From positions 1-64,000 of the IMG/VR virus record IMGVR_UViG_3300035698_022190: a stretch of DNA of 64,000 bases. One strand, 5' to 3'. The notes under the pieces were generated by a model that saw nothing but the letters and a program-made list of their open reading frames with translations, searched no databases and was not told the DNA's origin. Positions 1 through 64,000 of the stretch are shown here, piece after piece. Made by a program: the position numbers and the translations under genes. The number at the start of each line of letters is the position of its first letter. Position 1 is the first letter of the stretch.

Positions 1-870
1 CAGGAACATCGGGTACAGATGGGACATCAGGAACATCGGGAACATCCGCTACAAATGGAACATCGGGAACGTCTGGAACATCCGGAACATCCGCCACAGA
101 CGGAACATCCGCCACAGATGGAACATCAGGAACAGCCGGAACATCCGCCACAGACGGAACATCAGGAACAGCCGGAACATCTGGAACATCGGGTTTAGAT
201 GGAGAAGTGGCAGCACAAGGTCTCCCCGGAACGAACGGAACATCTGGAACATCGGGAACATCGGGAACATCCGCTACAGACGGAACGTCGGGAACATCAG
301 GAACATCCGGAACATCCGCCACAGACGGAACATCAGGAACATCGGGAACATCCGCTACAGATGGGACATCAGGAACATCAGGAACATCCGCTACAGACGG
401 AACATCTGGAACATCGGGAACATCCGGAACATCAGGAACGTCCGCCACAGATGGAACATCGGGAACATCGGGAACATCGGGAACATCCGCCACAGACGGA
501 ACTTCGGGAACATCTGGAACATCAGGAACATCGGGAACATCCGCTACAGACGGAACATCGGGAACATCGGGAACAGACGGAACATCAGGAACATCTGGAA
601 CATCGGGAACTTCGGGAACGTCTGGAACATCCGGAACATCAGGAACGTCCGCCACAGACGGAACAAATGGATCTTCAGGATCATCGGGAACATCAGGAAC
701 ATCTGGAACATCTGGAACATCCGCCACAGATGGAACAAATGGATCATCAGGATCATCTGGAACATCAGGAACGTCTGGAACATCTGGAACATCTGGAACA
801 TCCGCCACAGATGGAACAAATGGATCATCAGGATCTTCAGGATCATCCGCCACAGACGGAACATCGGGAG
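1..870 (+). repeat. Coding 9-nt tandem repeat (GGAACATCN) encoding Gly-Thr-Ser
   Basis: Visible directly; variation falls mainly at wobble positions, so the repeat is coding. Confidence 0.9.
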
Positions 871-1199
871 TTGATATTACCGAGGAGTATACTACTGTTA
901 ACCCAAGTGTAGGAGTAGTAACTTTAAATTTTAATAATGGTCCAAACTTTAAATCATTAATGTCTGGAGTAGTAACTATTAATCCATCAAACGAGGCAAC
1001 CAATTTAGGTAAAAGTGGAAATTTAATAATAACAGGAGATACGGGAGGTATAACTTCTATTACATTAAATGCTGAGTTTAAAACACCTTTAGGTCAAACA
1101 CCTTCATGAGTATTAACACAAGGTGCAATATCTATATTAACATATATAGTAGTAGATGCTTCAACAATTCTAGTTAATTACATGGGTAATTTTAGCTAA
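3..1199 (+). CDS. Collagen-like (Gly-Thr-Ser)n fibre/decoration protein, 5'-partial; one TGA read as Trp
   Basis: Frame 3 is open from the window start with GTS/ATD triplets. Reading TGA 1107-1109 as Trp completes the C-terminal domain ([40 protein letters not shown]) to TAA 1197-1199, which overlaps the next ATG (TAATG). Confidence 0.8.
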
Positions 1200-1843
1200 T
1201 GCAACGTTTTGGTTTTATTCAAAAATATGAGTGAGAAACGAGCTTTAGTACTGATATACAAACTAGTACGACGTCATTATTAAACACTACGACTACTTGA
1301 GAAACTAGTCGCTCTACAACTACTACATATCAAACATCTCATAGCACAACAACGGCTTATGATACAAGCATATCCACGACGACTACGTGACAAACATCTC
1401 ATAGCACTACCACATCATACAATACAGACACGAGTACGACGACTACGTGGGGAACATCTCATAGCACTACCACATCATATAATACAGACACGAGTACAAC
1501 AACTACGTGACAAACATCTCATAGCACTACCACATCATATAATACAGACACGAGTACAACAACTACGTGAGAAACGTCTCGAAGCACAACTACAACTTGA
1601 AATACTAATGTTTCAACGATAACAGTACGAGCGACTCTTAGATCAACGCAAGAGCCAGCTAATACAACAGTGGAAACAAGCAGTAGTTATAATACATATT
1701 GGAATACAACAAGTACCAAAAATACACAAAGAGAAACAAGCACTTATACAGAATATGAGACTGAATGAACAACATACTGAAATACCACAGTTCAAACAAA
1801 TACTGTAATATTTTGAACTAAAGGATCAGGGATAACACAATAA
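1199..1843 (+). CDS. Thr/Ser-rich repeat virion protein 1 (214 aa, 9 TGA=Trp)
   Basis: [16 protein letters not shown]..., with 20-aa repeat STTTTWQTSHSTTTSYNTDT. TAATG coupling at both ends. One repeat copy has TGG (1448) where the others have TGA (1388, 1508, 1568). Confidence 0.8.
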
Positions 1844-2454
1844 TGATTGAATATACATATGAAACTTGGTTAACAGGAACCCTGGTAGAGACATCTAACG
1901 TAACAGATGTTTGAACAGGACGCACAACATATTGGGATACTACTGTTAATACTATTACCCAATGACAAACTAGTAAATCAACTACTGTATATTGAAATAC
2001 TCAAAGAAGTACTAACCATGCAACAAATACATGGGTTAATACCAATGTTAGTACTATTACTTTAAGAAGTACAAATAGGTCTACGACCACATTATTTAAT
2101 ACAAGCGGGTCCACGACGACTACGTGACAAACATCTCATAGTACAACAACGGCTTATGATACAAGCATATCCACGACGACTACGTGACAAACATCTCATA
2201 GCACAACAACGGCTTATGATACAAGCATATCCACGACGACTACGTGACAAACATCTCATAGCACTACCACATCATATAATACAGACACGAGTACAACAAC
2301 TACGTGAGAAACGTCTCGAAGCACAACTACGGCATATAACACTAGCCATAGTACCACCACAGCATTTAATACAAATACATCAACAGGTACTTTCACCACT
2401 TTTAACACAACCACAGCTTGACAAACAAGCAGAACCACAAATTTTTATGAATAA
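1843..2454 (+). CDS. Thr/Ser-rich repeat virion protein 2 (203 aa, 8 TGA=Trp)
   Basis: MIEYTYETWLTG...TTTTWQTSHSTTTAYDTSI repeats...WQTSRTTNFYE*. Shares the 60-nt repeat with the upstream gene. Confidence 0.8.
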
Positions 2455-3376
2455 AAAAATTCAAACACAAATGTTTGATGACAAAGAACAGACTAAACGT
2501 TTAGGTGATTTAAAGAAAAACGTTGTTTTGTTACATCTGGAACAGGTAGAATTATATCTCTTAGAGGTATTAAAAGAATATAAAATTGATTGCGCTTATG
2601 ATGTAACCGCGCGTGAATTGCCATATTTTAAAACTTTAGGTTATACAGAATATGGAACAAACTTAATTTTAAACCCCTTAAACTTAGAGCTTAGATCTAC
2701 ACAAATTAAAGAGGCTATTTTAGATACTCCCGAAACTATATATGATTATACTACATATTTAAAAAATAATATACTTAAAAAACAGGCTAATAAATATCAG
2801 GATAGAGAAAATTTAACAGGCGCTTATCCAGCTGTAAAAAACATTGTTGTTTTGCCCGGATCTAATAAATTAAAAGATAAGACTTGCCTTAACAAATTAA
2901 TATACATAAGTAAATTGCATGAAGGCAATATATATTTTAAACCGCACCCTTTAACTAAGCATTTTATGATTGGGGAGCTAAAAGATCTGTTTGGAGAACA
3001 TGCCATCTTGCCGAGAGAGGCAGATTTATATGAATTTTTAGTGCAAGCAGATAAAGTATATACCACACATATAAGTGAATCAGCTTTATACGCAAGTGTC
3101 CTTGGCAAAGAGATTGAACCTATAGATGTTTATAACCATTTACAAGATGGATCCTTTTATCATATAAATAGGTTTTTATTTGAAGAGCAGTTATATAATA
3201 GAGACCCTTCAATATGAATAAATAAAACTTTTTCCAGTTATAAGTCAGGGATTATAAATCCAACCGTAGATTTAAACTGAAAAGATAAGGTAGATAATTA
3301 TCTCGAGTATATAATGGGTATTCGAAATAGATATAAAAATTGATATATTGAGAAGTCTAAAAAAGAAAAAAAATAG
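2447..3376 (+). CDS. Putative glycosyltransferase-like protein (GT-B/capsule-biosynthesis-like), 309 aa with 3 TGA=Trp
   Basis: Starts MNKKIQTQMF. Motifs VVLPGS, YFKPHP and ADKVYTTHISESALYASVLGK resemble KpsC/KpsS/sialyltransferase-type GT-B domains. Read-through extends it to TAG 3374-3376. Confidence 0.55.
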
Positions 3377-3404
3377 TACCAGTATTTTAATGTAAATAAA
3401 AAAC

Positions 3405-3433
3405 TTGACTATCTTGTCACATAAGTTTATATT
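3405..3433 (+). promoter_or_regulatory. Sigma70-type promoter TTGACT-N17-TATATT, probably leaderless
   Basis: Exact 17-nt spacer; ATG 3439 lies 5 nt after the -10 box. Confidence 0.65.
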
Positions 3434-3438
3434 AAGTT

Positions 3439-3615
3439 ATGAGAATAGTACGGGATCCTTTTGTTGATTTCCCCAGTACGACATTGAATAAAATAAGAGA
3501 AGAAGTAAAAATGCTTGCAGAGCGTTTTTTACGACAAAATGGCCTACCTACATTAGGCATTAATGTTACAGAAAATCTGCAGGATTTTTTATTTCCACGG
3601 GTAAATATTAGATAA
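3439..3615 (+). CDS. Hypothetical protein (58 aa)
   Basis: MRIVRDPFVDFPSTT...FPRVNIR*. Follows the promoter and is TAATG-coupled to the next gene. Confidence 0.6.
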   Translation: MRIVRDPFVDFPSTTLNKIREEVKMLAERFLRQNGLPTLGINVTENLQDFLFPRVNIR

Positions 3616-4478
3616 TGGCTACCACAGGAAATATAAGTTTAGATATAAAATATATCTTCATTAGTTTTGCACAACAATTATTTGCTACACATGGACTGTA
3701 TACATGAAATACAAACCCCATTGAAACAAAGATAATAATTGCTGATAAAAATGCTGTTGATTTAGGTATAGTAGCTAAACGACCTTCAATTATTTTATCT
3801 CGTGGCGGCTTTTCGTTTATGAAATTAGCGATCAACCAACGAGCACCATCCAAAGATTTCGTTCATTTGGACGGAACACAAAATTTAGTAGGACCTTTAG
3901 GATCTGCAGATGCTTCAAAAAACGCTGTTTTTATGGACCAAATACAAGGTTCAGCAACATTTAATGTTTTATCAAAGCAGGGTATACAAGCAGAAACTAT
4001 TGCTAACGAGCTATACATGGCCTTAGTCGGATATAAAGAAGATATAAGGGCTAAGGGTATGGAAATTAAAAATATCTCATTTGGCGAAGAATCCATGCTT
4101 AAACATACTTCAGAAATTGAAGTATCGGCTATAGCCATCGGAGTTCAATTTACTAAAACAGTAAAAGTAGCTCGCGGTGAAAAACAAAATAATTGTTTAG
4201 TTTATCAAGATGGTACGGAAGTTAAAGAAGGTATACATTTTAGAGTGGCAACGGCAGGCACACAAATTGTTTTTGAAGATGCCCCTGCAACGGGAACAGC
4301 TTTAACATTAACATATGTACATGCCATAACATTAGCAACTCATACATCAGTAACTTTAATAGGTACTGTTGACGGATCAAACAAAACTTTTACAGTCCCG
4401 GAAAGTGGAGTAATTTATGGTTATTATACATTATTAGATTCCGTAGACATAACTATTAATGATGCAACTTATGATTAA
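3615..4478 (+). CDS. Putative tail completion/neck protein (287 aa, 1 TGA=Trp at 3705)
   Basis: MATTGNISLDIKYIFISFAQQLFATHGLYTWNTNP... joins the 3819-4478 ORF in frame. Position upstream of the sheath; KRPSIILSRG resembles tail-terminator-like proteins. Confidence 0.55.
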
Positions 4479-48468: not shown

Positions 48469-48477
48469 GGTAGACTT

Positions 48478-51400
48478 ATGCTAGATATAAAAAACTTTAT
48501 TATAGAACAAATAAAAACCACCAATCCAAACGCTGATGTTAGAACAGGATCAGTTTTTAAGGACTTAGTGCTAAACCCCCTTAGCTCAATTTTAGCGGGA
48601 TACCAACAAGAGCATGAAAGTTTCTTACAAAGAGAGGCCGTTACAAATCTTACAGAACTGGCTTCATCCGAACTAGACTCTGTTGCTTCTAACTTCTTGA
48701 TTACAAGAAACGAAGGATCCTACTCTGTTGGTGAAGTTAAAATTTATTTTAGCGATCCAAGAGCAATTTCATTTCCAGCTGGGACAATTTTTACTACAAA
48801 CACTGGTTTAGAATATCAGACTTTAGCAACATTTACCTTAAGTAAATTTCAAATGGAACAAAATGTTGTTGATTTTCCTAACTATGATACAGGATCTATT
48901 GCTTTAAGAGCAATGTTACCTGGCATAAAGCACAACATCCCAGAAGGAACTATTTTAACTTTTTCTAGTAGTGTAAATTTATCTCCAGTAAGAATAACGG
49001 CTGTCTCTGGATTTACTGGTGGAACTGCTCATGAAGACAATGATTCCTTATTTAGACGTTTAAAAGATACAGTTCACAACAAATCACTTGCAAGTGCCTA
49101 TGCTATAAAAGCTAAAATTGTTGATAACTACGATGACGTAAAAAACGTTAAGGTCGTTGGTTCTGGACACCCACTAATGATTAGAGATTTAACGACAATG
49201 GTTTCAGATATAGCAAGTTATAAATCAGAAGATTTTTATCTTGTATACTCAGGGCAACATTCAGAGCTTTATGATAAAAGTCATGAAGCATATCTAAATT
49301 TCTTTAATGACCCGCTACCAGGAATTCTACCAACTATGCCGGCCGTATCAGGATGATTATCAGAACTAACAACTGCGCAGTATCAAAGTGTATATAAATC
49401 TACTGATGCTTATTACTTAGAAGAAAATAACCAAGCCCTTATTCATGAATCTTTTGCAGAATTGATTGATCCGGACAACCCACAAGCAGCTTTACAGCTT
49501 ATTATTGATAATAATAAGTGGTATGTAAGTGATGGCGCTAATCCAACAAATGAAGTTTTTTATATTGATGAAATTAATGTAGAGGGCGGAAAACTAAGAT
49601 TAGGAAAATATCTAGATCCGGATGCTGAAGATAAACTGCTACATTTACCTTACTCAGAGATGGCTCTTTTAAATGATTTAGCTACCTCTAGATTACCTGG
49701 AACGACCGAGCGACTTGAGCTAGCTATTTCGGGAATGACTTCTACAGAACAATATAATAATACTGCACCAATATTTCATCGTGAGCTTTCAGAGCACACA
49801 GGAATTCAAATAACTTTTAATTTTGAAACAACTGATGATACTGTAAATGGTGAGATGGCATATGCCACTGTATTTAGAAATTCAAATTTTTATCAGCCAC
49901 AGGATGGTTATGGTGTTGCCTTTAGAAAACAGCCAGACTATTTAATTCGTATGGCTGCCGAAACACACACAGCCGCTGATATTGCCACCTTTACCGAACA
50001 GTACGGAGTGGCTCCTACCAAATTTGGTGCAGCTTTATTAGCAGATAACACACTATGAAAATATAATGTTTATTTAGTTGATAACGATGTACTTCAAGAA
50101 GAAATTTGGGTGGGCGGAGAACAACTTTGAGATCAAACATCTGGGAAGAACCAATTCATTGTTGCTGGAAAAGCATGGATAGAAAACGATGTAACTTATA
50201 ATGTAAAAATGAATATATATAGTACTATGGCTACTGAAGTATGACTATATGAAGTAGGACAAGCGCAAGGCTCCGCTATTATTAGTCGTGGCGCAACTGA
50301 TCCGAGATATGTTCCAATTGCTAATGAAGATATAGATGCAATAAATGGTGTAATTACTCAACGAAATCATTTTGGATTGGCTGTGGCTCAAACACGTAAC
50401 AATGAGTGGTATTTTGACGATTTAAATATTACAAGTTTTGCCTCTAAATCTCCAAAACATTTATTTAGAATCAATGTTGCAGATACAGAAATAGCGGCTG
50501 ATGACGACTTTGAAGTCAATTATTATGGAGCTGGATATGATCCAGTCTTATATTTAGCGGACGGAAATACCGGCCATAGCAAGACACTTGCACAAGTATG
50601 AAATGAAAATAGCAGCGCATGGGAAGATATAGGTACACATACTTATACAATTGCGGATTCAAAAGCAAACCAGTTAATTACAGATCAATTTACTCCATTA
50701 AGTAACTATACAGACGCAGGTGGTTTTTTAAATATTGCGGCCTTGGCACATAACTTTGGAGCAGCTTTTCCTAGTGACACGCAACACGGATTAAGAACCC
50801 ACTATGTTGAAGTAAATAATATAACCCCAGACACAGTACATCGTGGTAATGCAATGGACATATATGTTCAAGACCCAGATAATATAATAAAAGGGTCTAC
50901 AGCACAGGTAATGACTTCTAATACCTTGTTAGTACACAATATGCCAAGCATTCCAGGGTTTATCCAAGAGATACTTGAAGTGCGGGAGGGCATTTCTAAA
51001 GTAGCTTATGATGCATCGACATATTCAATTACGAATTTAGCAGACGGAGATAGCTACTCAGCAGATCAACAATATTCTATTGCTTTTGCTTCTGGTGATA
51101 TGACCGGGACTTTAATTGAAGTTGTTTATAGATATTGAAGCAACGGTGTTGCTGTGGCAACCTTATTAACGCAAGATGATGTGCGCTTCCCATTAGCCGA
51201 TAATAAAGTTAAAGTAATGGCCCCAACAATTATGAATATTACTAGCTTAATTTATTCAGGCGGATTACCAGCTGCCGAAATGAAGACATCTATTGCTACA
51301 TATTTGAACGGGTTAACAACAACCCAATTTGATAAGTCTGATCTTATTAATCATATGTATGACCAAGGTGCTAATTATGTAGATACTGATATTAAAATCA

Positions 51401-51534
51401 CTATCAGAGAATACGATACAGAGGCGACAAAGACTACTCGTAAAATGACGGATAGTCGATATACACTTCGTACAGATGTTGTAAGTCACTTCTACACTAA
51501 CGAAGATGAACTTTCAGGAGTTGTACAAATATAA
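48478..51534 (+). CDS. Baseplate J/gp47-like wedge protein (1018 aa, 6 TGA=Trp)
   Basis: GSVFKDL, LDSVASNF.ITR, FPAGT.F and FTGG..HEDNDSL..R motifs; five listed fragments in one frame with no TAA/TAG until 51532. Confidence 0.8.
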
Positions 51535-56622: not shown

Positions 56623-56631
56623 TTTTAATCT

Positions 56632-59600
56632 ATGGCAACTTATAAAGGCAGATTAGATCCCGAAAAGACAAAAGCTTATCGAGGAATATTAACTTACATC
56701 TTTGACATTAATGGTCATCGTGTAGGTGTAGATGCAACTGATGACTATGGTATATATGAGTTCTCAGGACTTGAAACGGGTTGACATCGTATTACCTTCT
56801 TAGGGGGCAATTATGATGAAAAGGATACCATCGATGTTTTTGTAACTTCTACTCCCGGAGATCCAGATTCTGTTGGTCGCTTTAGTGGAACTCCCACCTT
56901 AGAAGTATATGAGGAAGGTTATACTTATACAAGTGGAAATAATATTGATTCAGCGGAATCCTATGCTCGTGTTAATATATCAAACCTAGCTCTGTCTCAA
57001 GGTACTTTATCCGATGTAGTTTTACATTACCGTGATAGTAACCAATCCCTCCCAAGTTTAGAAGGTCTGACTATTGCTTGTGTTGGAGATAGTATTACTG
57101 TAGGTATGGATCCTGCACAAGAAGCAGACGAAGATTATCCTTCCCAATTAGAAGCTTTAATATCTGGTGGCACTACTGTCAGTAATTATGGCGTCTCTGC
57201 CAAAACAATGACTACAACCTTATCAGGTATCTCTTATAGAGAAACCGATAGCTACACAAATGCTTTAGCTGCAGAAGCTGATGTGTATATTGTTGGGCTT
57301 GGAATGGGTGATGCTAATCATTGATCTGAGGTTAGCGCGGATTTTTTAACTGACACAATTTCCTTATATGAATCTCTAAAAACTCCAACAAACGTTGTTT
57401 TATTTAATAAATTAACTCCTTCTTTTTACACGGGTATTACTAATACCACTATAGGGTATGCAAACAGTTTCTTAGCTAATGCAATGGCTTCTGTAGGAGC
57501 TCCCGCCCCTATAGATTTACACAGTGATATGATGGAGCATGAAGACGATTGATTTATTCCTGGTGATATACTACATCCAAATGTTGCGGGCAACACTTTT
57601 ATGGCCGGAAAAGTATATGAAAAATTAGAAAGTCTTGTTGTTTTAGATCGTCCTGCTGTCTCTGGATTAGGAACACCTGCGACTATTTCTGGTTGGACTG
57701 AATGATTTACAATGGCCTATAGCACAAATTCAGACGATGTAGAATCTAACGGGGATATAATAGTATCAAAATCTTTAACACTACCAACAATTCCCTTTAA
57801 TTCTGATTTTAGGGCAACCTTTATAGATGACACAGGGAGCTGAATTGAGGATGAAGATACCGATGAAATAGTACATGCGTACGACTATGATGTAACCTTT
57901 GGTCAAGTATTAGACAATACTCCTCCCGAAATTGATTCTGATAAATTCTATATAGACGCTGATAATAATCCAGATACGCCTGCTATTAGAAGCATCAACA
58001 CATCAACTGGATTTTTAATTAGTAAGCAAGGGGCAATAACGGATTCAATTTCAGAGGTCACGAAAATTTTTGCTCAACCCGCTTTATTTAGCTATAGCAC
58101 GGTAATCACTTCTACAAATGAGGGAAATACTTCTTGAAATGATTCTGATTTAGTTGATTGAAATGTAGGAGATTTAGCAGGATATTATATTCTTGATAAA
58201 AATTATGAGACATGAAAAATTATTAGTTTTGCATCTGGAGCAGGAACCATTACTGTTGCGGGAACTGGCGTAGTAATAAATAGTTTCTATGCTATTATTA
58301 AATGACTTGGAACAGACCATGATCTAATTAGCTCCTTATGAGATTATGAATGAACTTATAATGATGGTGGTGGATACCCGATTGCTTTTAGCGGACCTGA
58401 CATACTATCAAGACCTACTGAATGATTAAAACCAGGATTTGCTACTTCAAAATATGGTTTTATAGTTACTGGGGCGGATAAACATAAGAATATCGTAACT
58501 AGTTTTGCAGATATGGCGATGCCCGACATTAAAGTGGGGAATCCTGCTTTCGGCGGCACCACCGAAATGAAATGATATTTTTGGGATGGAAGCGAAATCG
58601 CTAGGCCCAACTCTTACGATCCAGTATATGGGTGGTACAATGACGCCGATTTATATTTACGATTAGAGGCCCGAGTGGGTTATGAGTTGGCTCATGCTGC
58701 ATATCAAATTTCTGAAGCTGATGGAAGTTGGGACCCCGATGTGTTCTACCCTGTGGCCGCGATAGATGGATATTGTGACATACCATTATTTGAAGGTGTT
58801 AGGACTATTCAATTTACTTATGCGTTGACCGGGGTAAATGGTGTTGATGAGCATTTAACGTGATATACAAAACCGTACCAATGGGACAAAACAGCTCCAG
58901 AATGGAGTCCTACTGGAAAATCGTTATCAGCCGGATTTAATGAATTACTGGTTTCTTGGACTGGGGATCCGCCTTCAGACCCTGAGCCAAGTGTTGGAGG
59001 AAGCGGGGAAGCTAGTGGTCACAAAGGTTTTAGGGTATACTATGGTCCCGGTGGTTTTGAAGGTACTACCATTCTGGATTATGGAAGCTCCACTACATCA
59101 TTGACTATCCCGGCAAATTATAATACACCCACATGTGTCTGGGTAGCTGCAAGGGATCACGCAGATAATTTTGGAACACCCGAAGAATTTGGATGTGCTA
59201 CGGCAGCCCCAATTGTACGTGCAGATGTAGATGGGGCTCTTAGAATATTTTCTTCAAGTTATCCTTTAATATCAGGACAAGATGCCCATGTTTGGCAAGA
59301 TAGGTACGGTATAGCTGTTCCTATAGAAAGTTGTTCTATTACAATGCCAGCCGGATTAACAGGGGCACCAGAATTGTTAAGTATCCAGTATGCTGCAAAA
59401 GCTGATGCACTAGACCCAGTTATTAGTGGGCTGGGCTGAACAGATGTTACTGATGACAACATGACAGATGGAACAGGAAATCCTGGCGACGTAATGCATT
59501 TTGATGTGGACCGGGGGGAAGATGTTGAAAAACATTTAACAGGAACTACTGGTTTTTCTTTCGAAACAGGAGCTGTTGCAAGGGTATATACTTTCCGATT

Positions 59601-62600
59601 CGATCCTGTACAAGACAAATATTTCTGAAGAGCGGTCTTTAAGCCAGGACAAGTTTTAGTTGATGTAGGTACTAGCACAGGAATTTCAACAGAATTGAGT
59701 GAAGTTTATGATGTGCATTTTAATAGTATTCTCGCAGCAGATTTAATTGTTGGTGGAGTATTACGTTTGGAAACAGGCCTATCTATATGAGGCAAGACCG
59801 GTGAAGTAGGGATGACTATATCTCAAGATGGTTTATCTTTTTATGACCATTTAGATTCTTCGGCTGGAACTGCCGGTCCCGGCGCAACAAAAACAGTTGA
59901 TATTGATGGAAATACGGGAGATTTTGTTTTCGGAAAAGATTACGGAGCTTACGAAGACCAATCTTATTTGAAATGGGTTGATGGGGCTGTTGAATTACGT
60001 GGTAATTTACGACTATTAAATGGCTCGGAAATAATAAGCCCTATTAACTATGTAGGGGCCTGGAGCGCTACATATACTGCAGATAACGGTATCAATTATT
60101 TAGTAAATGATGCAGTTTCTTTTTGAGACTCAGAGACAGAAATAACAAATCAATATATTTGTATTGAAGAGCATGAATCAGCTTTGCTAAAAGATCCTTC
60201 TAATGCAACATATTGAGAACAATTAACTGGATCTACACCTGTATTCTCTTATTTTATAAAACCAGAGGGTGGAACTGCAATTAAGAATGGTATAGGAACT
60301 CTTCCTTTAGTTGCCACACAACATGGAGCTTTAGGCCAGTTTCCTATAGAACCCGATCACAACCCGTTAGCATTACAGCTTTATACAGATGATGATGAGA
60401 GTCATGGTACGGAGTGGACGGTAAGTGGGATAGATATAGATAATAGTTTAGTAGTATACTTAGCAGATGCTATCATTTCAGCGCCCGGTGCTACTATTTA
60501 TGACACCATAACTCTTTCAGATATTTTAGATGGGGATGACCCTACACAGGGGTCTATCATAACAAATAATGGTCTTGCTTTTACAAAAGGATTAGATCAC
60601 GAATGGGTGCCCGCGGCTGCTTCTACAAATTTAGCTTCTGTATTTTATAGAGCAGGGGTTCAAATTGACACATACTTAAGAACCGTGACACTGACTGAAG
60701 GGGACGGAACATTAGATGCCGTCGAAGGTACCAGCTCTAGTGGTTTTATTACAATGACTAAAGAGAATGGCGGAACTTCTACCATAACTTTAACATTTAC
60801 ATATAATGATGGTGTGCATAGTCCGGTTTCTGTTTCTGAGAATGTAATATCTGTTCAAGCTGGAGAAGATGCCCAATCAATGAGTATAACTGCCGAAAGA
60901 CAAGTTTTTACTTACCATACTGACGATCAGTTATATACAATTGGTACATCTATAATTACAGCGACAGCGCGTATTATAAATTTATTTGCCCCAATTCCAA
61001 CATTTTATTACACCTTTAAAAAAGGTGTAACTGTCCTTCAAGCAAGTTCAGTCGATAATACATATCAATATACAGCACAGGCAGATTATGGAGACATGCC
61101 CGAAACGATAACTGTGGAAGCTGCATTGTCAGCGGGCGGGGAGGTAATGGTTACCGAAGAAATAGACATGTTTGGAGTAAAAAATGGCTCAGATGCGGTT
61201 ACAGTGGTACTTACTAATCCAACACATACTTTTGCTGTTTTCGGAAACGGTGATATTGAATATGCAGGATCGGGTACAGATATTCGGGTATTTCTTGGGG
61301 CATTAGCATTGGATTATGATGCGGCTTTATCGGTCGCCAATACATTTAAAGTTACTGTAACAGACGACACTGATATAACAGTTGATTCAAGTCCAACACC
61401 TGTTGGCGATTATACTATTCGATATGGGCCTGCTAGTGGTTTTAATACCAATGCTGATACTGCTTCCATCACTTTTGAAATAACTATTTCAGATGAAAAT
61501 AAATATCAAAGAGGCCCATTCACACAAATACAAACATTTGCACCTGCCAGAGAAGTAACTTATAAATACTTTTTGAAGCCACTTAATGGTACGGCCATAA
61601 AAAATGGTACTGACACATTAGACGTTCAAGCTTTTCGTGTGACTCCGAGTGGGGAAGAAGAGCTTGAAGCAGGAAACCCCGAAGGCTTAGCTTTATATGC
61701 ATCGGATAGTGATACACCGCACGCAGAGGGCTCTCCTAGTGTAATTAAATGGACTGGCATCGACGATACCGACATTAATGGTAATATAGACCTATGGCTA
61801 GCTGATGGCGTACCATCCAGCGTTCCTACGAAATATGATACAATTACATTGGTGGATATCACTGACGGGGATGATGCTACAACAGGTTTTATCGAAGGTC
61901 TTCCATTAGCTTACTCACAGGAACCAAATGGTGGTGATTGGTCAAATGCTGGGCCAACAACTTTAACGGCTTATTTCTATAGATCCGGAGTAGAGCTACA
62001 AACCATGATTAAAAGTGTTGTTTTAAATCAGGGTGACGGAACTTTGTCTGCAACTGGGGGCACTGTTGGTTATATTACTTGTATAGTCCATAATAATGCT
62101 TCAACAGCTATTACGCTAGAATTTCAATTTGATGATAGTATTGGAAACCCAGTTACTGTCGCAGAAACAGTTTCAACTGTTGTTGGGGGAACTGACGGAT
62201 CTTCGGGATCTTCTGGCTCAAGTGGGTTGGCTGGAGCAGAGGGTGCAGAAGGAGCTGCAGGCGTGGACGCAAGGACAGTATCTTTAACAACAGACAAGCA
62301 AGCTTTTGAATATTTAACAAGTAATGTACTAACTGGGACTACTACATGTACATTGACTGCAACTGCATTAAATACTACAGGAACAGTCTACTATCAATTT
62401 TATAAAACACCAAAGGGCGGTGCCGCCAGCTCAGTTCAAAATTCAGCAAGCGCTACATATATATATACAGCTAATAGTTGGTACCCTGATATGCCCGAAA
62501 CAATGGAAGTACAAATACGCGAGGGTGCGGTTACTGGACCAATATTAGCGCGTGATTCAATGACTATGATGGCCATTAAACCGGGTACAGATGGCGACGA

Positions 62601-63999
62601 TGGTCTAGATGGTACAACTGTTTTAGTAACTAACGAAGCCCATTCTTTACCGACGACTAGCGCAGGCGCAGTAACTTATACAGGTTCCAGTACTTATATT
62701 AAAGTTTGAATAGGAACTACTGCAATCCCAGTTGATCTTGTATCTAGCTATGCTTCCCCATCATTTAGAGTTACTGCAGCAGGTACAGGTATTACAGCGG
62801 GAGGAATCTGACAGGATAGCACTTATGTTGTTGGTGTTGGTAATGCAAGTGCGGTAACCACAAACCCAGCCACAGTAAATTTAACTATAACAGTAAAAGA
62901 TGCAGCAGGCACAGAAATTGTATATACCAAAATTCAGTCCCTTTCTCAATCTATTGAGGGTGATACGGGCGGAGCAGGAACTGCGGGCGATCCAGGTACT
63001 AGAGGGTCCTTACATTTTGAGGGCAACACTACAGAGATTTTGTGAACAAACGCCGCAGCAGAAGTAGTTATTGCTGATGCTATTGACGATGGTATTATTA
63101 CCGCAAAACAGAATCTAGATTCAGTTACTTTAAAAAATTCTGGTGTTGGGAGTTGAGACGGTTTTTGGGACACTACACAAAGTCCGGACGATTGAACTGT
63201 AGTTGAATACTATATGAATGGAAGTTTACTTGTGCAAGGAACTGTAACTGCCGCAGCACTAAACGCTGATAGTATTTTTTCAAAAGATTATACTCTAGGT
63301 ACTAATGGCTCTATTAAAACCAGCGGACGCGCTTATGGTGCAGCTTCAGCTGGTATATATTTAGGTAATGCTAGTAGTACGAGTAAATTAGATGTAACAA
63401 GTGCGAGTGGTACAAATTACATGCGCTGAGATGGGGCAAAATTTTCAGTTTATGGCGACGGTATGTGAATAATTGATTCATCGTCGGGACTAGTTGATGG
63501 TCCCATGTTAACTAGACATGTAGGAGATAGTCAAGGAGAGATCTTTACAAGCACTTCTACATCTTATGCTAAAAAAATGCAAGGTTCCTGTATATTAAAT
63601 TCTTTAGATACTAAAATTACTTGCGCTTATAGAGGATATAATTTAACTAATGATGCTGAAGGAAGGGTATGATTTAAAGTTTACTCTATTAACAACACCG
63701 TAACAGGATATAATACTGAGGTTGCAGCTGAAAGTGGTTGATTTGGAAACGGGGAAAGCACTACTAGCTGTTTTGTTGGAAATACACCAATTACTTTAGC
63801 TAGCGGAGAACAAGAATATATTAAATTTATAAAACCTGGAGATCTAGTACTTGGAAAGGATAATCAAATTAATGAAGTACAATCTATTCTAACCCCTACC
63901 CTTGGAACACAAACCTTATATAGAATAAATAAAAGTTTTCCTTTTGTAACAGGAGGACACCCATTTTGAACACAAAACGGCTGAAAAGTTATTGATCTA
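56632..63999 (+). CDS. Giant multidomain tail fibre/adhesin (>2450 aa, about 30 TGA=Trp, 3'-partial) with SGNH esterase, FN3/Ig-like repeats and a Hint domain
   Basis: Frame 1 has no TAA/TAG from ATG 56632 to the window end. GDSIT..YP..NYGVS..DILHPN near 57070-57600; CFVGNT Hint start at 63769. Confidence 0.8.
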
Positions 64000-64000
64000 G

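What the first reader, a model, noticed from the sequence alone, without database searches (positions are those of the whole stretch)
1199..3376. Two Thr-ladder repeat proteins coupled to a GT-like gene next to a (GTS)n collagen fibre
Seen only with TGA=Trp: two ~200-aa proteins with a 10-residue period (STTTT-W/Y-xTSx, aromatic every 10th residue), sharing near-identical 60-nt units. The first has its repeats near the N-terminus and the second near the C-terminus. Their genes overlap with the GTS-collagen gene and a KPHP-type GT-B gene. Inference: a mucin-like, O-glycosylated or beta-solenoid virion appendage modified by its own neighbouring transferase. A flat Thr array could alternatively bind ice or polysaccharide.
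Basis: partly seen in the sequence, partly recalled or inferred. Interest (0 to 1): 0.6.

Follow-up and report, generated by a model that had tools for sequence, protein, structure and literature searches.

The report
Phage tail-fibre Thr-ladder glycosylation cassette
Two threonine-rich, 10-residue-repeat proteins lie between a collagen-like tail-fibre gene and a sugar-transferase-fold gene in a TGA-recoded 210-kb salt-lake/marine phage, and this three-part module recurs in most of the related aquatic phage contigs examined (82 of 91), so it is most likely an undescribed sugar-decorated fibre attachment.

Summary
With TGA=Trp, window 1199-1843 and 1843-2454 encode 214- and 203-aa proteins (39% Thr) with a 10-residue period (S-T-T-T-x-[WYF]-x-T-S-x) and shared 60-nt repeat arrays. 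Stop/start overlaps link them to the collagen gene and to the 2447-3376 gene. The genome supports the code: TGA falls on Trp columns conserved in standard-code homologs, a tRNA(UCA) is present, and early genes avoid TGA.

The family does not depend on recoding. In 82 of 91 related loci, standard-code Thr-ladder ORFs of 200-1850 aa sit directly upstream of a homolog of the 2447-3376 product. In 32 loci a fibre with the same C-terminal domain lies upstream. Caulobacter phages Lullwater and Cr30 have degenerate versions next to fibre genes.

The 2447-3376 product is confidently GT-B (pLDDT 90). Its nearest folds are CMP-Kdo transferases, and it has an invariant KxHP motif, but it lacks their QxxxD nucleophile motif. 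A TibC-type protein O-heptosyltransferase fusion and a GT1 gene lie just upstream of the fibre gene.

Best reading: a fibre-attached Ser/Thr-ladder protein pair glycosylated by dedicated transferases. Glycosylation, virion location and ladder fold remain unproven. AF2 gave no ladder fold (pLDDT 29).

The parts
3..1199 (+). 3' part of the collagen-like (GTS)n fibre gene. Its 5' part lies at the other end of the contig (genome 209607-210208), so the assembly broke inside the repeat.
   Evidence: PF01391 Collagen scores 3e-31 and phrog_1806 'collagen like minor tail' scores 2e-35. The contig end carries the same repeat and an N-terminal part with PF01391.
870..1196 (+). Conserved non-collagen C-terminal domain of the fibre, ending ..[10 protein letters not shown]. 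It is the likely docking site for ladder A.
   Evidence: tblastn finds this domain directly upstream of ladder genes in 32 related loci at 31-40% identity. The same ending..ILVNYIGDFA, occurs in podophage fibres P0129 and P0130. Docking is an inference.
1199..1843 (+). Ladder A (P0001, 214 aa, 9 in-frame TGA). It has an N-terminal motif ([12 protein letters not shown]), about 11 decapeptide units, and then a less regular Thr/aromatic-rich part.
   Evidence: The N-terminus resembles that of ladder A or single-chain relatives (M..[IL]GF...[FW]).
1315..1594 (+). 60-nt tandem array inside ladder A (two decapeptides per unit: a W-unit and a Y-unit).
   Evidence: TRF: period 60, 4.7 copies, 84% matches. 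It falls in the same repeat family as the array in ladder B.
1843..2454 (+). Ladder B (P0002, 203 aa, 8 in-frame TGA). An irregular N-part is followed by about 12 decapeptide units, and the protein ends ..RTTNFYE.
   Evidence: The C-terminus matches the ..RTTNFYA/S ending of single-chain relatives and the ..NYY/TFYY endings of others.
2097..2346 (+). 60-nt tandem array inside ladder B.
   Evidence: TRF: period 60, 4.2 copies, 83% matches. Copies are up to 83% identical to the ladder A reference copy over 260 nt.
2447..3376 (+). GT-B-fold transferase-like gene (P0003, 309 aa, 3 TGA) with an invariant K165-P-H167-P168 motif. Its start overlaps the end of ladder B by 8 nt.
   Evidence: AF2 pLDDT 90.1, pTM 0.88. 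Foldseek top hits are KpsC and WbbB (E 7e-6 to 1e-5). VIA gives KpsC Z 10.7 over 227 residues and WbbB Z 9.1. It matches phrog_26179 at 2e-35 and has more than 539 homologs.
1197..1201 (+). TAATG stop/start overlap between the fibre gene and ladder A. The same TAATG occurs at 1841-1845 between ladder A and ladder B.
   Evidence: Read from the sequence. Independent contigs span these places without differences. Translational coupling is inferred.

Best explanation
The stretch is the core of a tail-fibre accessory cassette, expressed late from TGA-recoded genes.

The parts are a fibre (here collagen-like) with a conserved C-terminal domain, two Thr-ladder proteins, and a dedicated GT-B transferase. 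The two ladder proteins correspond to the N-terminal and C-terminal halves of single-chain relatives.

Proposed working, all inferred:
1. Ladder A docks by its conserved N-terminus on the fibre's C-terminal domain.
2. Ladders A and B, which have matched repeat numbers, associate side by side into a stalk whose far end is the variable tip.
3. The many Ser/Thr hydroxyls are O-glycosylated in the cytoplasm before assembly. The enzymes would be the downstream GT-B enzyme (probably using a CMP-activated ulosonic acid such as Kdo, or a related host nucleotide sugar) and, in this phage, also the upstream TibC-type heptosyltransferase and GT1 enzymes.
4. The result is a sugar-coated distal fibre used for adhesion to the host surface or for shielding.

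Shown here: the genes, the code, the repeat architecture, the conserved synteny, the GT-B fold with its nucleotide-binding motif, and the intact TibC-type enzyme next door.

Inferred: virion location, docking, A-B pairing, the identity of the acceptor and the donor sugar.
For: Genes and code.

Conserved module:
- 82 of 91 loci have ladder ORFs directly upstream of the P0003 homolog, all under the standard code.
- The fibre C-terminal domain lies upstream in 32 loci.
- In SU10-like podophage contigs the order is capsid, a 145-aa gene, fibre, ladder, then a P0003 homolog at 35% identity, E 1e-45 to 9e-55.
- In cultured Caulobacter phage Lullwater the order is annotated tail fiber gp40, degenerate ladder gp41, P0003-like gp42. 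Cr30 has the same order.

Split-gene reading: single-chain relatives have an N-ladder, a central domain and a C-ladder, with termini like P0001's start and P0002's end.

Pairing hints:
- The window has 10 versus 9 regular units.
- Ladder A and B lengths co-vary across 13 distinct loci (r = 0.69, p = 0.009; r = 0.84 with the window pair added).
- The two arrays share near-identical DNA units.
- P0124 and P0125 have near-identical ladders but unrelated central domains.

Enzyme:
- GT-B fold nearest the CMP-Kdo transferases, with invariant KxHP and T207-H208..E211.
- Three TGA codons on conserved Trp columns show the gene is under selection.

Glycosylation context:
- TIGR04414 'autotransporter strand-loop-strand O-heptosyltransferase' scores 332 bits against a cut-off of 200.
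- The match to TibC (4rap) is E 5e-64, with the catalytic Asp and four iron-finger Cys kept.
- GT1 and FkbM methyltransferase domains are adjacent.
- GT4, GT25, methyltransferase and radical-SAM genes occur in related modules.
Against: - There is no experimental or proteomic evidence that the ladder proteins are in virions or are modified.
- AF2 gave no fold for a ladder homolog (pLDDT 29, 5-sequence alignment), so stalk formation and pairing are untested.
- A simple spacing test did not separate mirror from parallel register.
- The length correlation uses related loci.
- P0003 lacks the QxxxD nucleophile motif of the Kdo transferases it most resembles. The equivalent loop is a conserved LPGSNKLK, so donor and mechanism are open.
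- The genome has no CMP-sugar synthetase or heptose-pathway SIS gene, so donors would have to come from the host.
- The TibC-like and GT1 genes were not found in the flanks of related loci, so they are not part of the conserved core.
Confidence: 0.5

Rival explanations
1. The ladder proteins are a purely proteinaceous distal adhesin or stalk of the tail fibre. They would be beta-rich, perhaps an obligate oligomer. The P0003-type protein would then not modify them. It would act as a fibre-assembly factor, or it would modify a host envelope glycan during infection.
For: - The position directly after tail-fibre genes is where assembly chaperones and adhesins usually lie.
- Central domains are swappable between near-identical ladders.
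- Pro is nearly absent, and about 90% of the listed aromatic spacings are even numbers, which fits beta strands.
- P0003 lacks the Kdo-transferase nucleophile motif.
Against: - The nucleotide-binding KxHP and T-H..E residues are invariant across the family, which argues for an enzyme.
- Related modules repeatedly contain other modifying enzymes.
- The strict adjacency to ladder genes holds whatever the fibre type.
Confidence: 0.22
2. P0001 and P0002 are one gene read through a programmed or accidental frameshift at 1820-1845, or a decaying, split pseudogene of a single-chain ladder.
For: - The relatives closest in terminal motifs (L012, L015, L030) have a single ladder ORF.
- The two ORFs are in different frames and meet at TAATG.
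Against: - Thirteen distinct related loci also have two separate ladder ORFs.
- The junction is identical in contigs from three other runs.
- Both ORFs keep intact repeats, and their 17 TGA codons sit at aromatic positions.
- The P0002 frame is open for only 7 codons upstream of its ATG.
Confidence: 0.08
3. The flat Thr arrays bind ice or polysaccharide directly, in the manner of insect TxT antifreeze beta-solenoids, without glycosylation.
For: - The unit has TxTx[aromatic]xT on one face and SxTxTxNxS on the other.
- The habitat is saline lakes and sea.
Against: - No fold was obtained.
- The repeats lack the Cys ladders typical of some insect antifreeze proteins.
- The module occurs in Caulobacter phages from pond water.
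- It is tied to transferases in all settings examined.
Confidence: 0.04
4. The ORFs are artefacts of forcing TGA=Trp onto repetitive non-coding DNA.
For: They are invisible under table 11.
Against: - 98 distinct standard-code homologous ORFs up to 1850 aa exist.
- TGA falls on conserved Trp columns.
- A tRNA(UCA) is present.
- Termini are conserved.
Confidence: 0.01

Closest known systems
Retaining beta-Kdo glycosyltransferases KpsC (GT107), WbbB (GT99) and KrkA (GT140)
   Same: They are the best structural matches to P0003 over both domains (KpsC Z 10.7 over 227 residues; Foldseek E 7e-6). They share the (K/R)xHP CMP-binding motif and a Ser/Thr..Glu phosphate/ribose contact region.
   Different: - P0003 has no QxxxD nucleophile motif. 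The equivalent loop is a conserved LPGSNKLK.
- There is no detectable sequence similarity (Pfam PF05159 and a profile-versus-PDB search both found nothing).
- The known enzymes act on glycolipid or glycan acceptors, not on proteins.
AIDA-I/TibA autotransporter adhesins with their heptosyltransferases AAH/TibC (BAHT family)
   Same: A repeat-rich Ser/Thr-bearing adhesin is glycosylated in the cytoplasm by a dedicated neighbouring GT-B enzyme. This phage encodes a true BAHT-family domain three genes upstream (TIGR04414 at 332 bits; catalytic Asp and iron-finger Cys kept) (PMC4358343).
   Different: - The ladder unit is 10 residues, not the roughly 19-residue units I recall for the AIDA-type beta-helix (own knowledge), and matches no Pfam repeat.
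- The proteins have no autotransporter barrel.
- The BAHT gene is fused to FkbM and GT9 domains and is not part of the conserved core.
Serine-rich repeat glycoproteins (GspB, Fap1, PsrP) with GtfA/GtfB (own knowledge)
   Same: Very long Ser/Thr-rich short-period repeats flank a binding region and are O-glycosylated by dedicated GT-B enzymes encoded beside them. GtfA and Asp1-3 appear among weaker fold matches.
   Different: - SRRPs have dipeptide repeats, a special signal peptide, an LPXTG anchor and an accessory Sec system. None of these is present here.
- The ladder has a conserved aromatic residue every 10 residues.
Glycosylated collagen-like Thr-rich fibres (Bacillus BclA) and glycosylated mycobacteriophage virions (own knowledge)
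   Same: In BclA a collagen-like GxT fibre carries O-glycans on Thr. Phage-encoded GTs beside structural genes are thought to glycosylate mycobacteriophage capsid proteins (mentioned in PMC11256854).
   Different: - Those phage cases concern short C-terminal tails of capsid or tail-tube proteins in phages of Actinobacteria.
- Here a separate repeat protein pair, a different GT family and an aquatic phage are involved. ADP-heptose and CMP-Kdo would come from a Gram-negative host (inference).
Stop-codon-recoded phages (TGA or TAG reassigned in late genes)
   Same: In-frame TGA is confined to late structural genes, a suppressor tRNA is present, and early genes are compatible with the standard code (bioRxiv 10.1101/2021.08.26.457843).
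   Different: - The described cases are mostly from gut microbiomes. This one is from salt-lake and marine samples.
- Its tRNA(UCA) has a long variable arm.

Membership tests
Retaining beta-Kdo glycosyltransferases (GT99/GT107/GT140) | Modified GT-B fold | tested here: met
   AF2 pLDDT 90. KpsC 6mgb gives Z 10.7 over 227 aligned residues, and WbbB 5fa0 gives Z 9.1 over 211.
Retaining beta-Kdo glycosyltransferases (GT99/GT107/GT140) | [quoted passage not shown] | tested here: met
   K165, H167 and P168 are invariant in 30 aligned family members. The motif is defined in PMC12887879.
Retaining beta-Kdo glycosyltransferases (GT99/GT107/GT140) | QxxxD motif carrying the nucleophilic Asp, on the loop after the first strand of the C-terminal domain | tested here: not met
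   The topologically equivalent loop (residues 137-143) is a conserved PGSNKLK. No conserved Gln or Asp lies between strand 132-135 and KPHP. This was judged from sequence and secondary structure, not from a residue-level superposition.
Retaining beta-Kdo glycosyltransferases (GT99/GT107/GT140) | Transfer of Kdo from CMP-Kdo | not testable with these tools
   This needs an enzyme assay.
Bacterial sialyltransferase-type GT-B enzymes (HP-motif families) | HP motif plus an acidic catalytic base in the N-terminal domain | tested here: inconclusive
   The HP motif is present. E35, D52 and E57 are invariant in the N-domain, but their positions relative to the active site were not mapped. Polysialyltransferase 5wc6 matches the C-domain only, at Z 9.5.
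BAHT family (TibC/AAH protein O-heptosyltransferases): applies to the neighbouring 929-aa protein, not to P0003 | Family HMM above cut-off, catalytic Asp110, sugar-binding Thr/Lys/Trp, four iron-finger Cys | tested here: met
   TIGR04414 scores 332 bits against a cut-off of 200. The match to 4rap is E 5e-64 over residues 26-379. The alignment keeps LGD, T..K, W and C-x2-C..C..C.
Collagen triple-helix proteins (the fibre) | Long run of G-x-y triplets matching PF01391 | tested here: met
   PF01391 scores 3e-31 against a cut-off of 27.2 bits. TRF finds a 9-nt period over 24-804.
Serine-rich repeat glycoproteins | Special signal peptide, SRR1-BR-SRR2 layout, LPXTG anchor, accessory Sec genes | tested here: not met
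   The sequences show no signal peptide or LPXTG. No such neighbouring genes are present. Only the layout of repeat, variable region, repeat in single-chain relatives is alike.
Beta-solenoid antifreeze or adhesin repeats | A predicted or solved solenoid fold built from the repeats | tested here: inconclusive
   AF2 of homolog P0125 gave pLDDT 29 with no secondary structure.
TGA-to-Trp recoded phage genome | In-frame TGA at conserved Trp positions, a cognate tRNA(UCA), and a gain in coding density | tested here: met

The most novel reading that the evidence does not exclude
The Thr-ladder proteins are a new kind of phage fibre element. A matched pair (or a single hairpin chain) of decapeptide ladders would form a stalk with a swappable tip. 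That stalk would be densely O-modified with an anionic ulosonic acid (Kdo-like) by a new GT family that keeps the CMP-binding KxHP site but uses a mechanism without the Asp nucleophile. To my knowledge this would be the first protein O-ulosonylation by a Kdo-transferase-like enzyme, and an early case of tail-fibre glycosylation in phages of Gram-negative bacteria. The module appears widespread in marine and lake viromes.
Probability: 0.15. Interest if true: 0.85.

Novelty: new variant of a known kind. Interest (0 to 1): 0.62.

Why it matters
If the reading is right, many aquatic phages, from 40-kb podophages to jumbo myophages of more than 200 kb, carry a portable cassette that builds sugar-coated fibre tips. 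Three things would follow.

- It would add a post-translational layer to phage host recognition and to evasion of host or grazer recognition.
- It would define two unannotated protein families: the Thr ladder, and a GT-B family with more than 500 members.
- It would offer a tractable test system in Caulobacter phages Lullwater and Cr30.

The locus is also a clean internal proof of TGA-to-Trp recoding in a non-gut phage. Invariant Trp columns are encoded by TGA here and by standard Trp codons in homologs read under the standard code.

Tried and rejected
- **Complex prediction:** I therefore did not send these two proteins to any other folding tool, and the A-B pairing was not tested by structure prediction.
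- **Ladder fold:** AF2 of the standard-code ladder homolog P0125 with a 5-sequence alignment gave no usable model (pLDDT 29). This is not evidence for disorder.
- **Family scans:** Pfam and PHROGs found nothing for P0001 and P0002. Pfam and NCBIfam found nothing for P0003, and NCBIfam found nothing for the ladder homolog P0125. tblastn of P0002 against cultured phages found nothing, possibly because of low-complexity masking.
- **P0003 by sequence:** a profile of the P0003 family against PDB sequences found nothing, so only fold comparison links it to Kdo transferases.
- **ESM Atlas:** the feature search on P0125 gave only weak unnamed viral clusters, score 0.78. The Atlas fold search failed twice because the machine did not answer.
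- **Register test:** a spacing-series test of mirror versus parallel register was uninformative.
- **Pathway genes:** searches of the genome for a CMP-sugar synthetase (PF02348), Capsule_synth (PF05159) and a heptose-pathway SIS domain (PF13580) found none.
- **Cultured relatives:** the tail sheath finds no close cultured relative.
- **Literature:** searches found no description of the ladder family.
- **Searches not used:** the large representative-protein search and the third homology search were left unused, because 98 distinct ladder relatives had already been recovered from loci.
Full report
**1. What is in the sequence**

Under table 11 the stretch 1199-2454 holds only short ORF fragments. 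With TGA read as Trp it resolves into two ORFs:
- 1199-1843 encodes P0001 (214 aa, nine in-frame TGA).
- 1843-2454 encodes P0002 (203 aa, eight in-frame TGA).

Both proteins are 39% Thr and 13-15% Ser. Both show a clear 10-residue period, with aromatic and Thr autocorrelation of 0.38-0.55 at lags 10 and 20. The unit is S-T-T-T-x-[W/Y/F]-x-T-[S/D]-x. In this phage a W-unit alternates with a Y-unit, which gives the 60-nt DNA period.

Tandem Repeats Finder reports arrays at 1315-1594 and 2097-2346 with 83-84% matches. The repeat finder places copies from both genes in one family, up to 83% identical over 260 nt.

The regular units sit near the N-terminus of P0001 and near the C-terminus of P0002.

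The genes are chained by overlaps: TAATG at 1197-1201 (fibre stop, P0001 start), TAATG at 1841-1845 (P0001 stop, P0002 start), and the ATG at 2447 of the next gene lies 8 nt inside P0002. Contigs from three to four other public runs cover all three junctions without a single difference or gap. The two-ORF arrangement is therefore not an assembly frameshift peculiar to this contig.

**2. Is TGA=Trp justified?**

Yes, on evidence from the genome itself.
- Long-ORF coverage of the window rises from 79% to 93%.
- In-frame TGA is confined to the + strand structural blocks (1-4475 and 37393-64000). It is almost absent from the - strand block at 7.8-36.4 kb. This is the pattern described for recoded phages (bioRxiv 10.1101/2021.08.26.457843).
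- The three TGA codons of the 2447-3376 gene fall on alignment columns where homologs read under the standard code have Trp in 22/29, 29/29 and 27/29 sequences.
- In the ladders, TGA always sits at the aromatic position. In 98 distinct standard-code relatives that position is F, Y or W, and their W codons are TGG.
- The 210,208-bp genome is one contig, which CheckV rates 100% complete. It carries a tRNA with anticodon UCA at 65786-65883 besides a normal tRNA-Trp(CCA).
- The UCA tRNA is 92-98 nt with a long variable arm. It scores as tRNA-Sec-like below Rfam's threshold. It shares A1-U72, G2-C71, G3-C70 and G73 with the phage's tRNA-Trp.

**3. The family is widespread and not tied to recoding**

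A word-based homology search with P0002 returned five proteins of 216-250 aa. Each is a single chain with an N-terminal ladder, a central Gly/aromatic-rich part of about 80 aa, and a C-terminal ladder ending ..RTTNFYA. P0001 begins like their N-termini and P0002 ends like their C-termini. The window's two proteins therefore correspond to the two halves of these single chains.

These five lie in SU10-like podophage contigs from Tara samples. The gene order there is capsid, a 145-aa gene, a fibre of 508-726 aa, the ladder (start overlapping the fibre stop), then a 292-310 aa protein. That last protein is 35% identical to the 2447-3376 product (P0003), with E 1e-45 to 9e-55. The fibres end ..ILVNYIGDFA and the window's collagen protein ends ..[10 protein letters not shown].

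P0003 itself has more than 539 homologs from marine, lake and other metagenomes, some on contigs of 170-260 kb. I fetched 80 loci from IMG/VR with a P0003-family alignment, plus 11 loci by exact look-up. The results were:
- In 82 of 91 loci, one or two ladder ORFs lie directly upstream of the P0003 homolog. They are 200-1850 aa with Ser+Thr fractions of 0.42-0.69, and all are open under table 11.
- The fibre C-terminal domain is found upstream of the ladder in 32 loci, wherever the flank reaches far enough.

The same order occurs in cultured phages. In Caulobacter phage Lullwater (T7-like) it is annotated tail fiber gp40, gp41 (216 aa, Ser+Thr 0.40, a degenerate ladder), P0003-like gp42 with IKPHP, then holin. 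In the T4-like Cr30 it is a fibre-like 315-aa protein, a 116-aa Tyr/Thr-rich protein, a P0003-like protein, then neck proteins.

The conserved core is therefore: fibre C-terminal domain, ladder(s), P0003-type gene.

**4. The transferase-like gene**

AF2 with a 30-sequence alignment gave a confident model (pLDDT 90.1, pTM 0.88).
- Foldseek against the PDB ranks the retaining beta-Kdo transferases first: KpsC 6mgd at E 7e-6, WbbB at 1e-5, then KrkA. Other GT-B enzymes follow, including polysialyltransferase, GtfA and TagF.
- The Foldseek-independent search agrees: KpsC at Z 10.7 over 227 residues, WbbB at Z 9.1 over 211 residues, and polysialyltransferase at Z 9.5 on the C-domain only.
- In BFVD the only close matches are uncharacterised phage proteins. 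Next come Tetraselmis virus 1 proteins, two uncharacterised and one named capsule polysaccharide biosynthesis protein.

The papers on KrkA and KpsC define the group by three features (PMC12887879, PMC10148158):
- **(K/R)xHP.** This is a CMP-binding motif shared with sialyltransferases. P0003 has invariant K165, H167 and P168.
- **Ser-Ser..Glu.** This contacts the CMP phosphate and ribose. P0003 has a conserved T207-H208..E211, which may be equivalent.
- **QxxxD.** This motif carries the nucleophilic Asp and lies on the loop after the first strand of the C-terminal domain. The loop after strand 132-135 in P0003 is a conserved LPGSNKLK with no conserved Gln or Asp.

P0003 thus resembles a CMP-sugar GT-B enzyme, but it is not a member of the double-displacement Kdo-transferase families as defined. 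Sequence methods see no relation.

The genome encodes no CMP-sugar synthetase, so any such donor would come from the host.

**5. More glycosylation genes next door**

The contig broke inside the collagen repeat. Its 3' end carries the N-terminal part of the same fibre gene. Immediately upstream of that lie three genes:
- a GT1-family gene (PF00534, 4e-10);
- a 929-aa fusion protein;
- a DUF6165 gene.

The fusion's first 380 residues are a TibC/AAH-type protein O-heptosyltransferase. It scores 332 bits for TIGR04414 against a cut-off of 200. It matches the TibC structure 4rap at E 5e-64 over almost the whole chain. It retains the catalytic Asp (LGD), the Thr/Lys/Trp sugar contacts and the four iron-finger cysteines (PMC4358343). 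An FkbM methyltransferase domain and a second GT9 domain follow.

TibC and AAH glycosylate Ser residues in repeat-rich adhesins in the cytoplasm.

Related modules carry other modifying enzymes between or after the ladder genes: SAM methyltransferases (one with a weak Hint/intein-like C-terminal part), a radical-SAM protein, and GT4 and GT25 genes. The TibC-like and GT1 genes were not seen within the 6-kb flanks of the related loci. They are therefore an addition in this phage, not part of the core.

**6. How it most likely works**

Shown: the genes, the code, the repeat design, the conserved three-part synteny next to tail-fibre genes, the GT-B fold with a conserved nucleotide site, and an intact protein O-heptosyltransferase nearby.

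Inferred:
- (a) Ladder A docks through its conserved N-terminus on the conserved fibre C-terminal domain, because the two always travel together.
- (b) Ladders A and B associate along their length.
- (c) The Ser/Thr ladder is the acceptor of the P0003-type enzyme and, here, also of the heptosyltransferase.

Evidence for (b):
- The window has ten versus nine regular units.
- Ladder A and B lengths co-vary over 13 distinct loci (r = 0.69, p = 0.009; r = 0.84 with the window pair added). These loci are related, so this is only suggestive.
- The two arrays share near-identical DNA units, as expected if they are homogenised together.
- The irregular elements are placed mirror-wise. NVSTITVR follows the ladder in P0001 and NVSTITLR precedes it in P0002. 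A 14-residue unit lies second from each outer end in P0128.
- P0124 and P0125 have almost identical ladders but unrelated central domains. This fits a stalk presenting a swappable tip.

Evidence against or missing:
- AF2 produced no fold for P0125 (pLDDT 29).
- My spacing test could not tell mirror from parallel register.

Whether the ladder is beta-structured or a disordered, mucin-like brush is open. Three features argue for extended strands rather than a classical Pro-rich mucin: near absence of Pro, a strictly placed aromatic residue, and mostly even aromatic spacings (about 90% of the listed spacings). About 60% of units in standard-code relatives also contain N-T-[S/T], so N-linked modification cannot be excluded.

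**7. Comparison with known systems, and novelty**

The closest functional analogues are bacterial repeat adhesins with dedicated cytoplasmic glycosyltransferases: AIDA-I/TibA with AAH/TibC, and serine-rich repeat proteins with GtfA/B. Also comparable are glycosylated collagen-like fibres (BclA) and the proposed glycosylation of mycobacteriophage capsid proteins.

None of their defining features other than 'repeat substrate plus adjacent GT-B' is met by the ladder proteins. P0003 fails the nucleophile-motif test of the Kdo-transferase families.

The ladder family and the P0003 family carry no functional annotation in Pfam, PHROGs or NCBIfam. P0003 does match phrog_26179, whose function is unknown. 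I found no paper describing either family.

I rate this a new variant of a known kind (a glycosylated repeat adhesin with its own transferase, here as a phage tail-fibre cassette), with moderate to high interest. Its main weakness is that modification and virion location are inferred from context only.

The phage is found in salt-lake and marine metagenomes and has no close cultured relative.

Noticed in passing
genome G000 65786-65883 (1.8 kb beyond the window end; locus L095 1786-1883): The only UCA-anticodon tRNA is 92-98 nt with a long variable arm. It scores as tRNA-Sec-like below Rfam's threshold (32.5 against 47 bits). It shares A1-U72, G2-C71, G3-C70 and G73 with the phage's 72-nt tRNA-Trp(CCA). 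Which amino acid it carries is not settled by its shape.
   Followed up: partly
genome G000 205467-209595 (locus L094 7467-11595), adjacent to the window start across the contig junction: Three genes lie directly upstream of the collagen fibre gene: a GT1 gene, a 929-aa fusion of a TibC/AAH-type protein O-heptosyltransferase with FkbM methyltransferase and GT9 domains, and DUF6165. I have not seen a phage-borne BAHT-family enzyme described.
   Followed up: yes
L042 2080-4430; L062 4273-5391; L086 3528-4502: In related loci ladder A often ends in a Gly run followed by C-[FMSA]-R-G-C. It is followed by, or fused to, a protein with a methyltransferase N-part and a weak Hint/intein-like C-part ending ..YFANGLLTHN. 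The Pfam scores are below cut-off. This hints at autoprocessing or ligation of ladder A. The window lacks this element.
   Followed up: partly
L086 4979-6004; L036 4991-5560: A radical-SAM protein (PF04055, 3e-9) or a SAM methyltransferase is inserted between ladder B and the P0003-type gene in some loci.
   Followed up: no
window 1-4475 and 37393-64000 versus 7800-36400: In-frame TGA is restricted to the + strand structural genes. The - strand block has almost none. This fits code switching between early and late genes.
   Followed up: partly
window 56629-64000 (+): A very long ORF of at least 2457 aa with 30 in-frame TGA runs off the window end, just upstream of the tRNA(UCA). It follows a baseplate wedge homolog at 48469-51531 (phrog_6, 4e-25), so it may be a giant fibre or baseplate protein.
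   Followed up: no
window 1 and genome end 210208: The contig starts and ends inside the same (GTS)n collagen repeat. The record is probably a circularly closed or permuted genome broken by the repeat, and the true number of collagen triplets is unknown.
   Followed up: partly
genome G000 95541-95943 and 98145-107601: The phage carries a tmRNA-like gene and a cluster of 25 tRNA genes.
   Followed up: no
P0124 versus P0125 (Tara podophage contigs, L007-L009): The two ladder proteins are 70% identical overall. Their ladders are almost identical, but their central parts of about 85 aa are unrelated. This is the pattern expected of an exchanged receptor-binding tip.
   Followed up: partly
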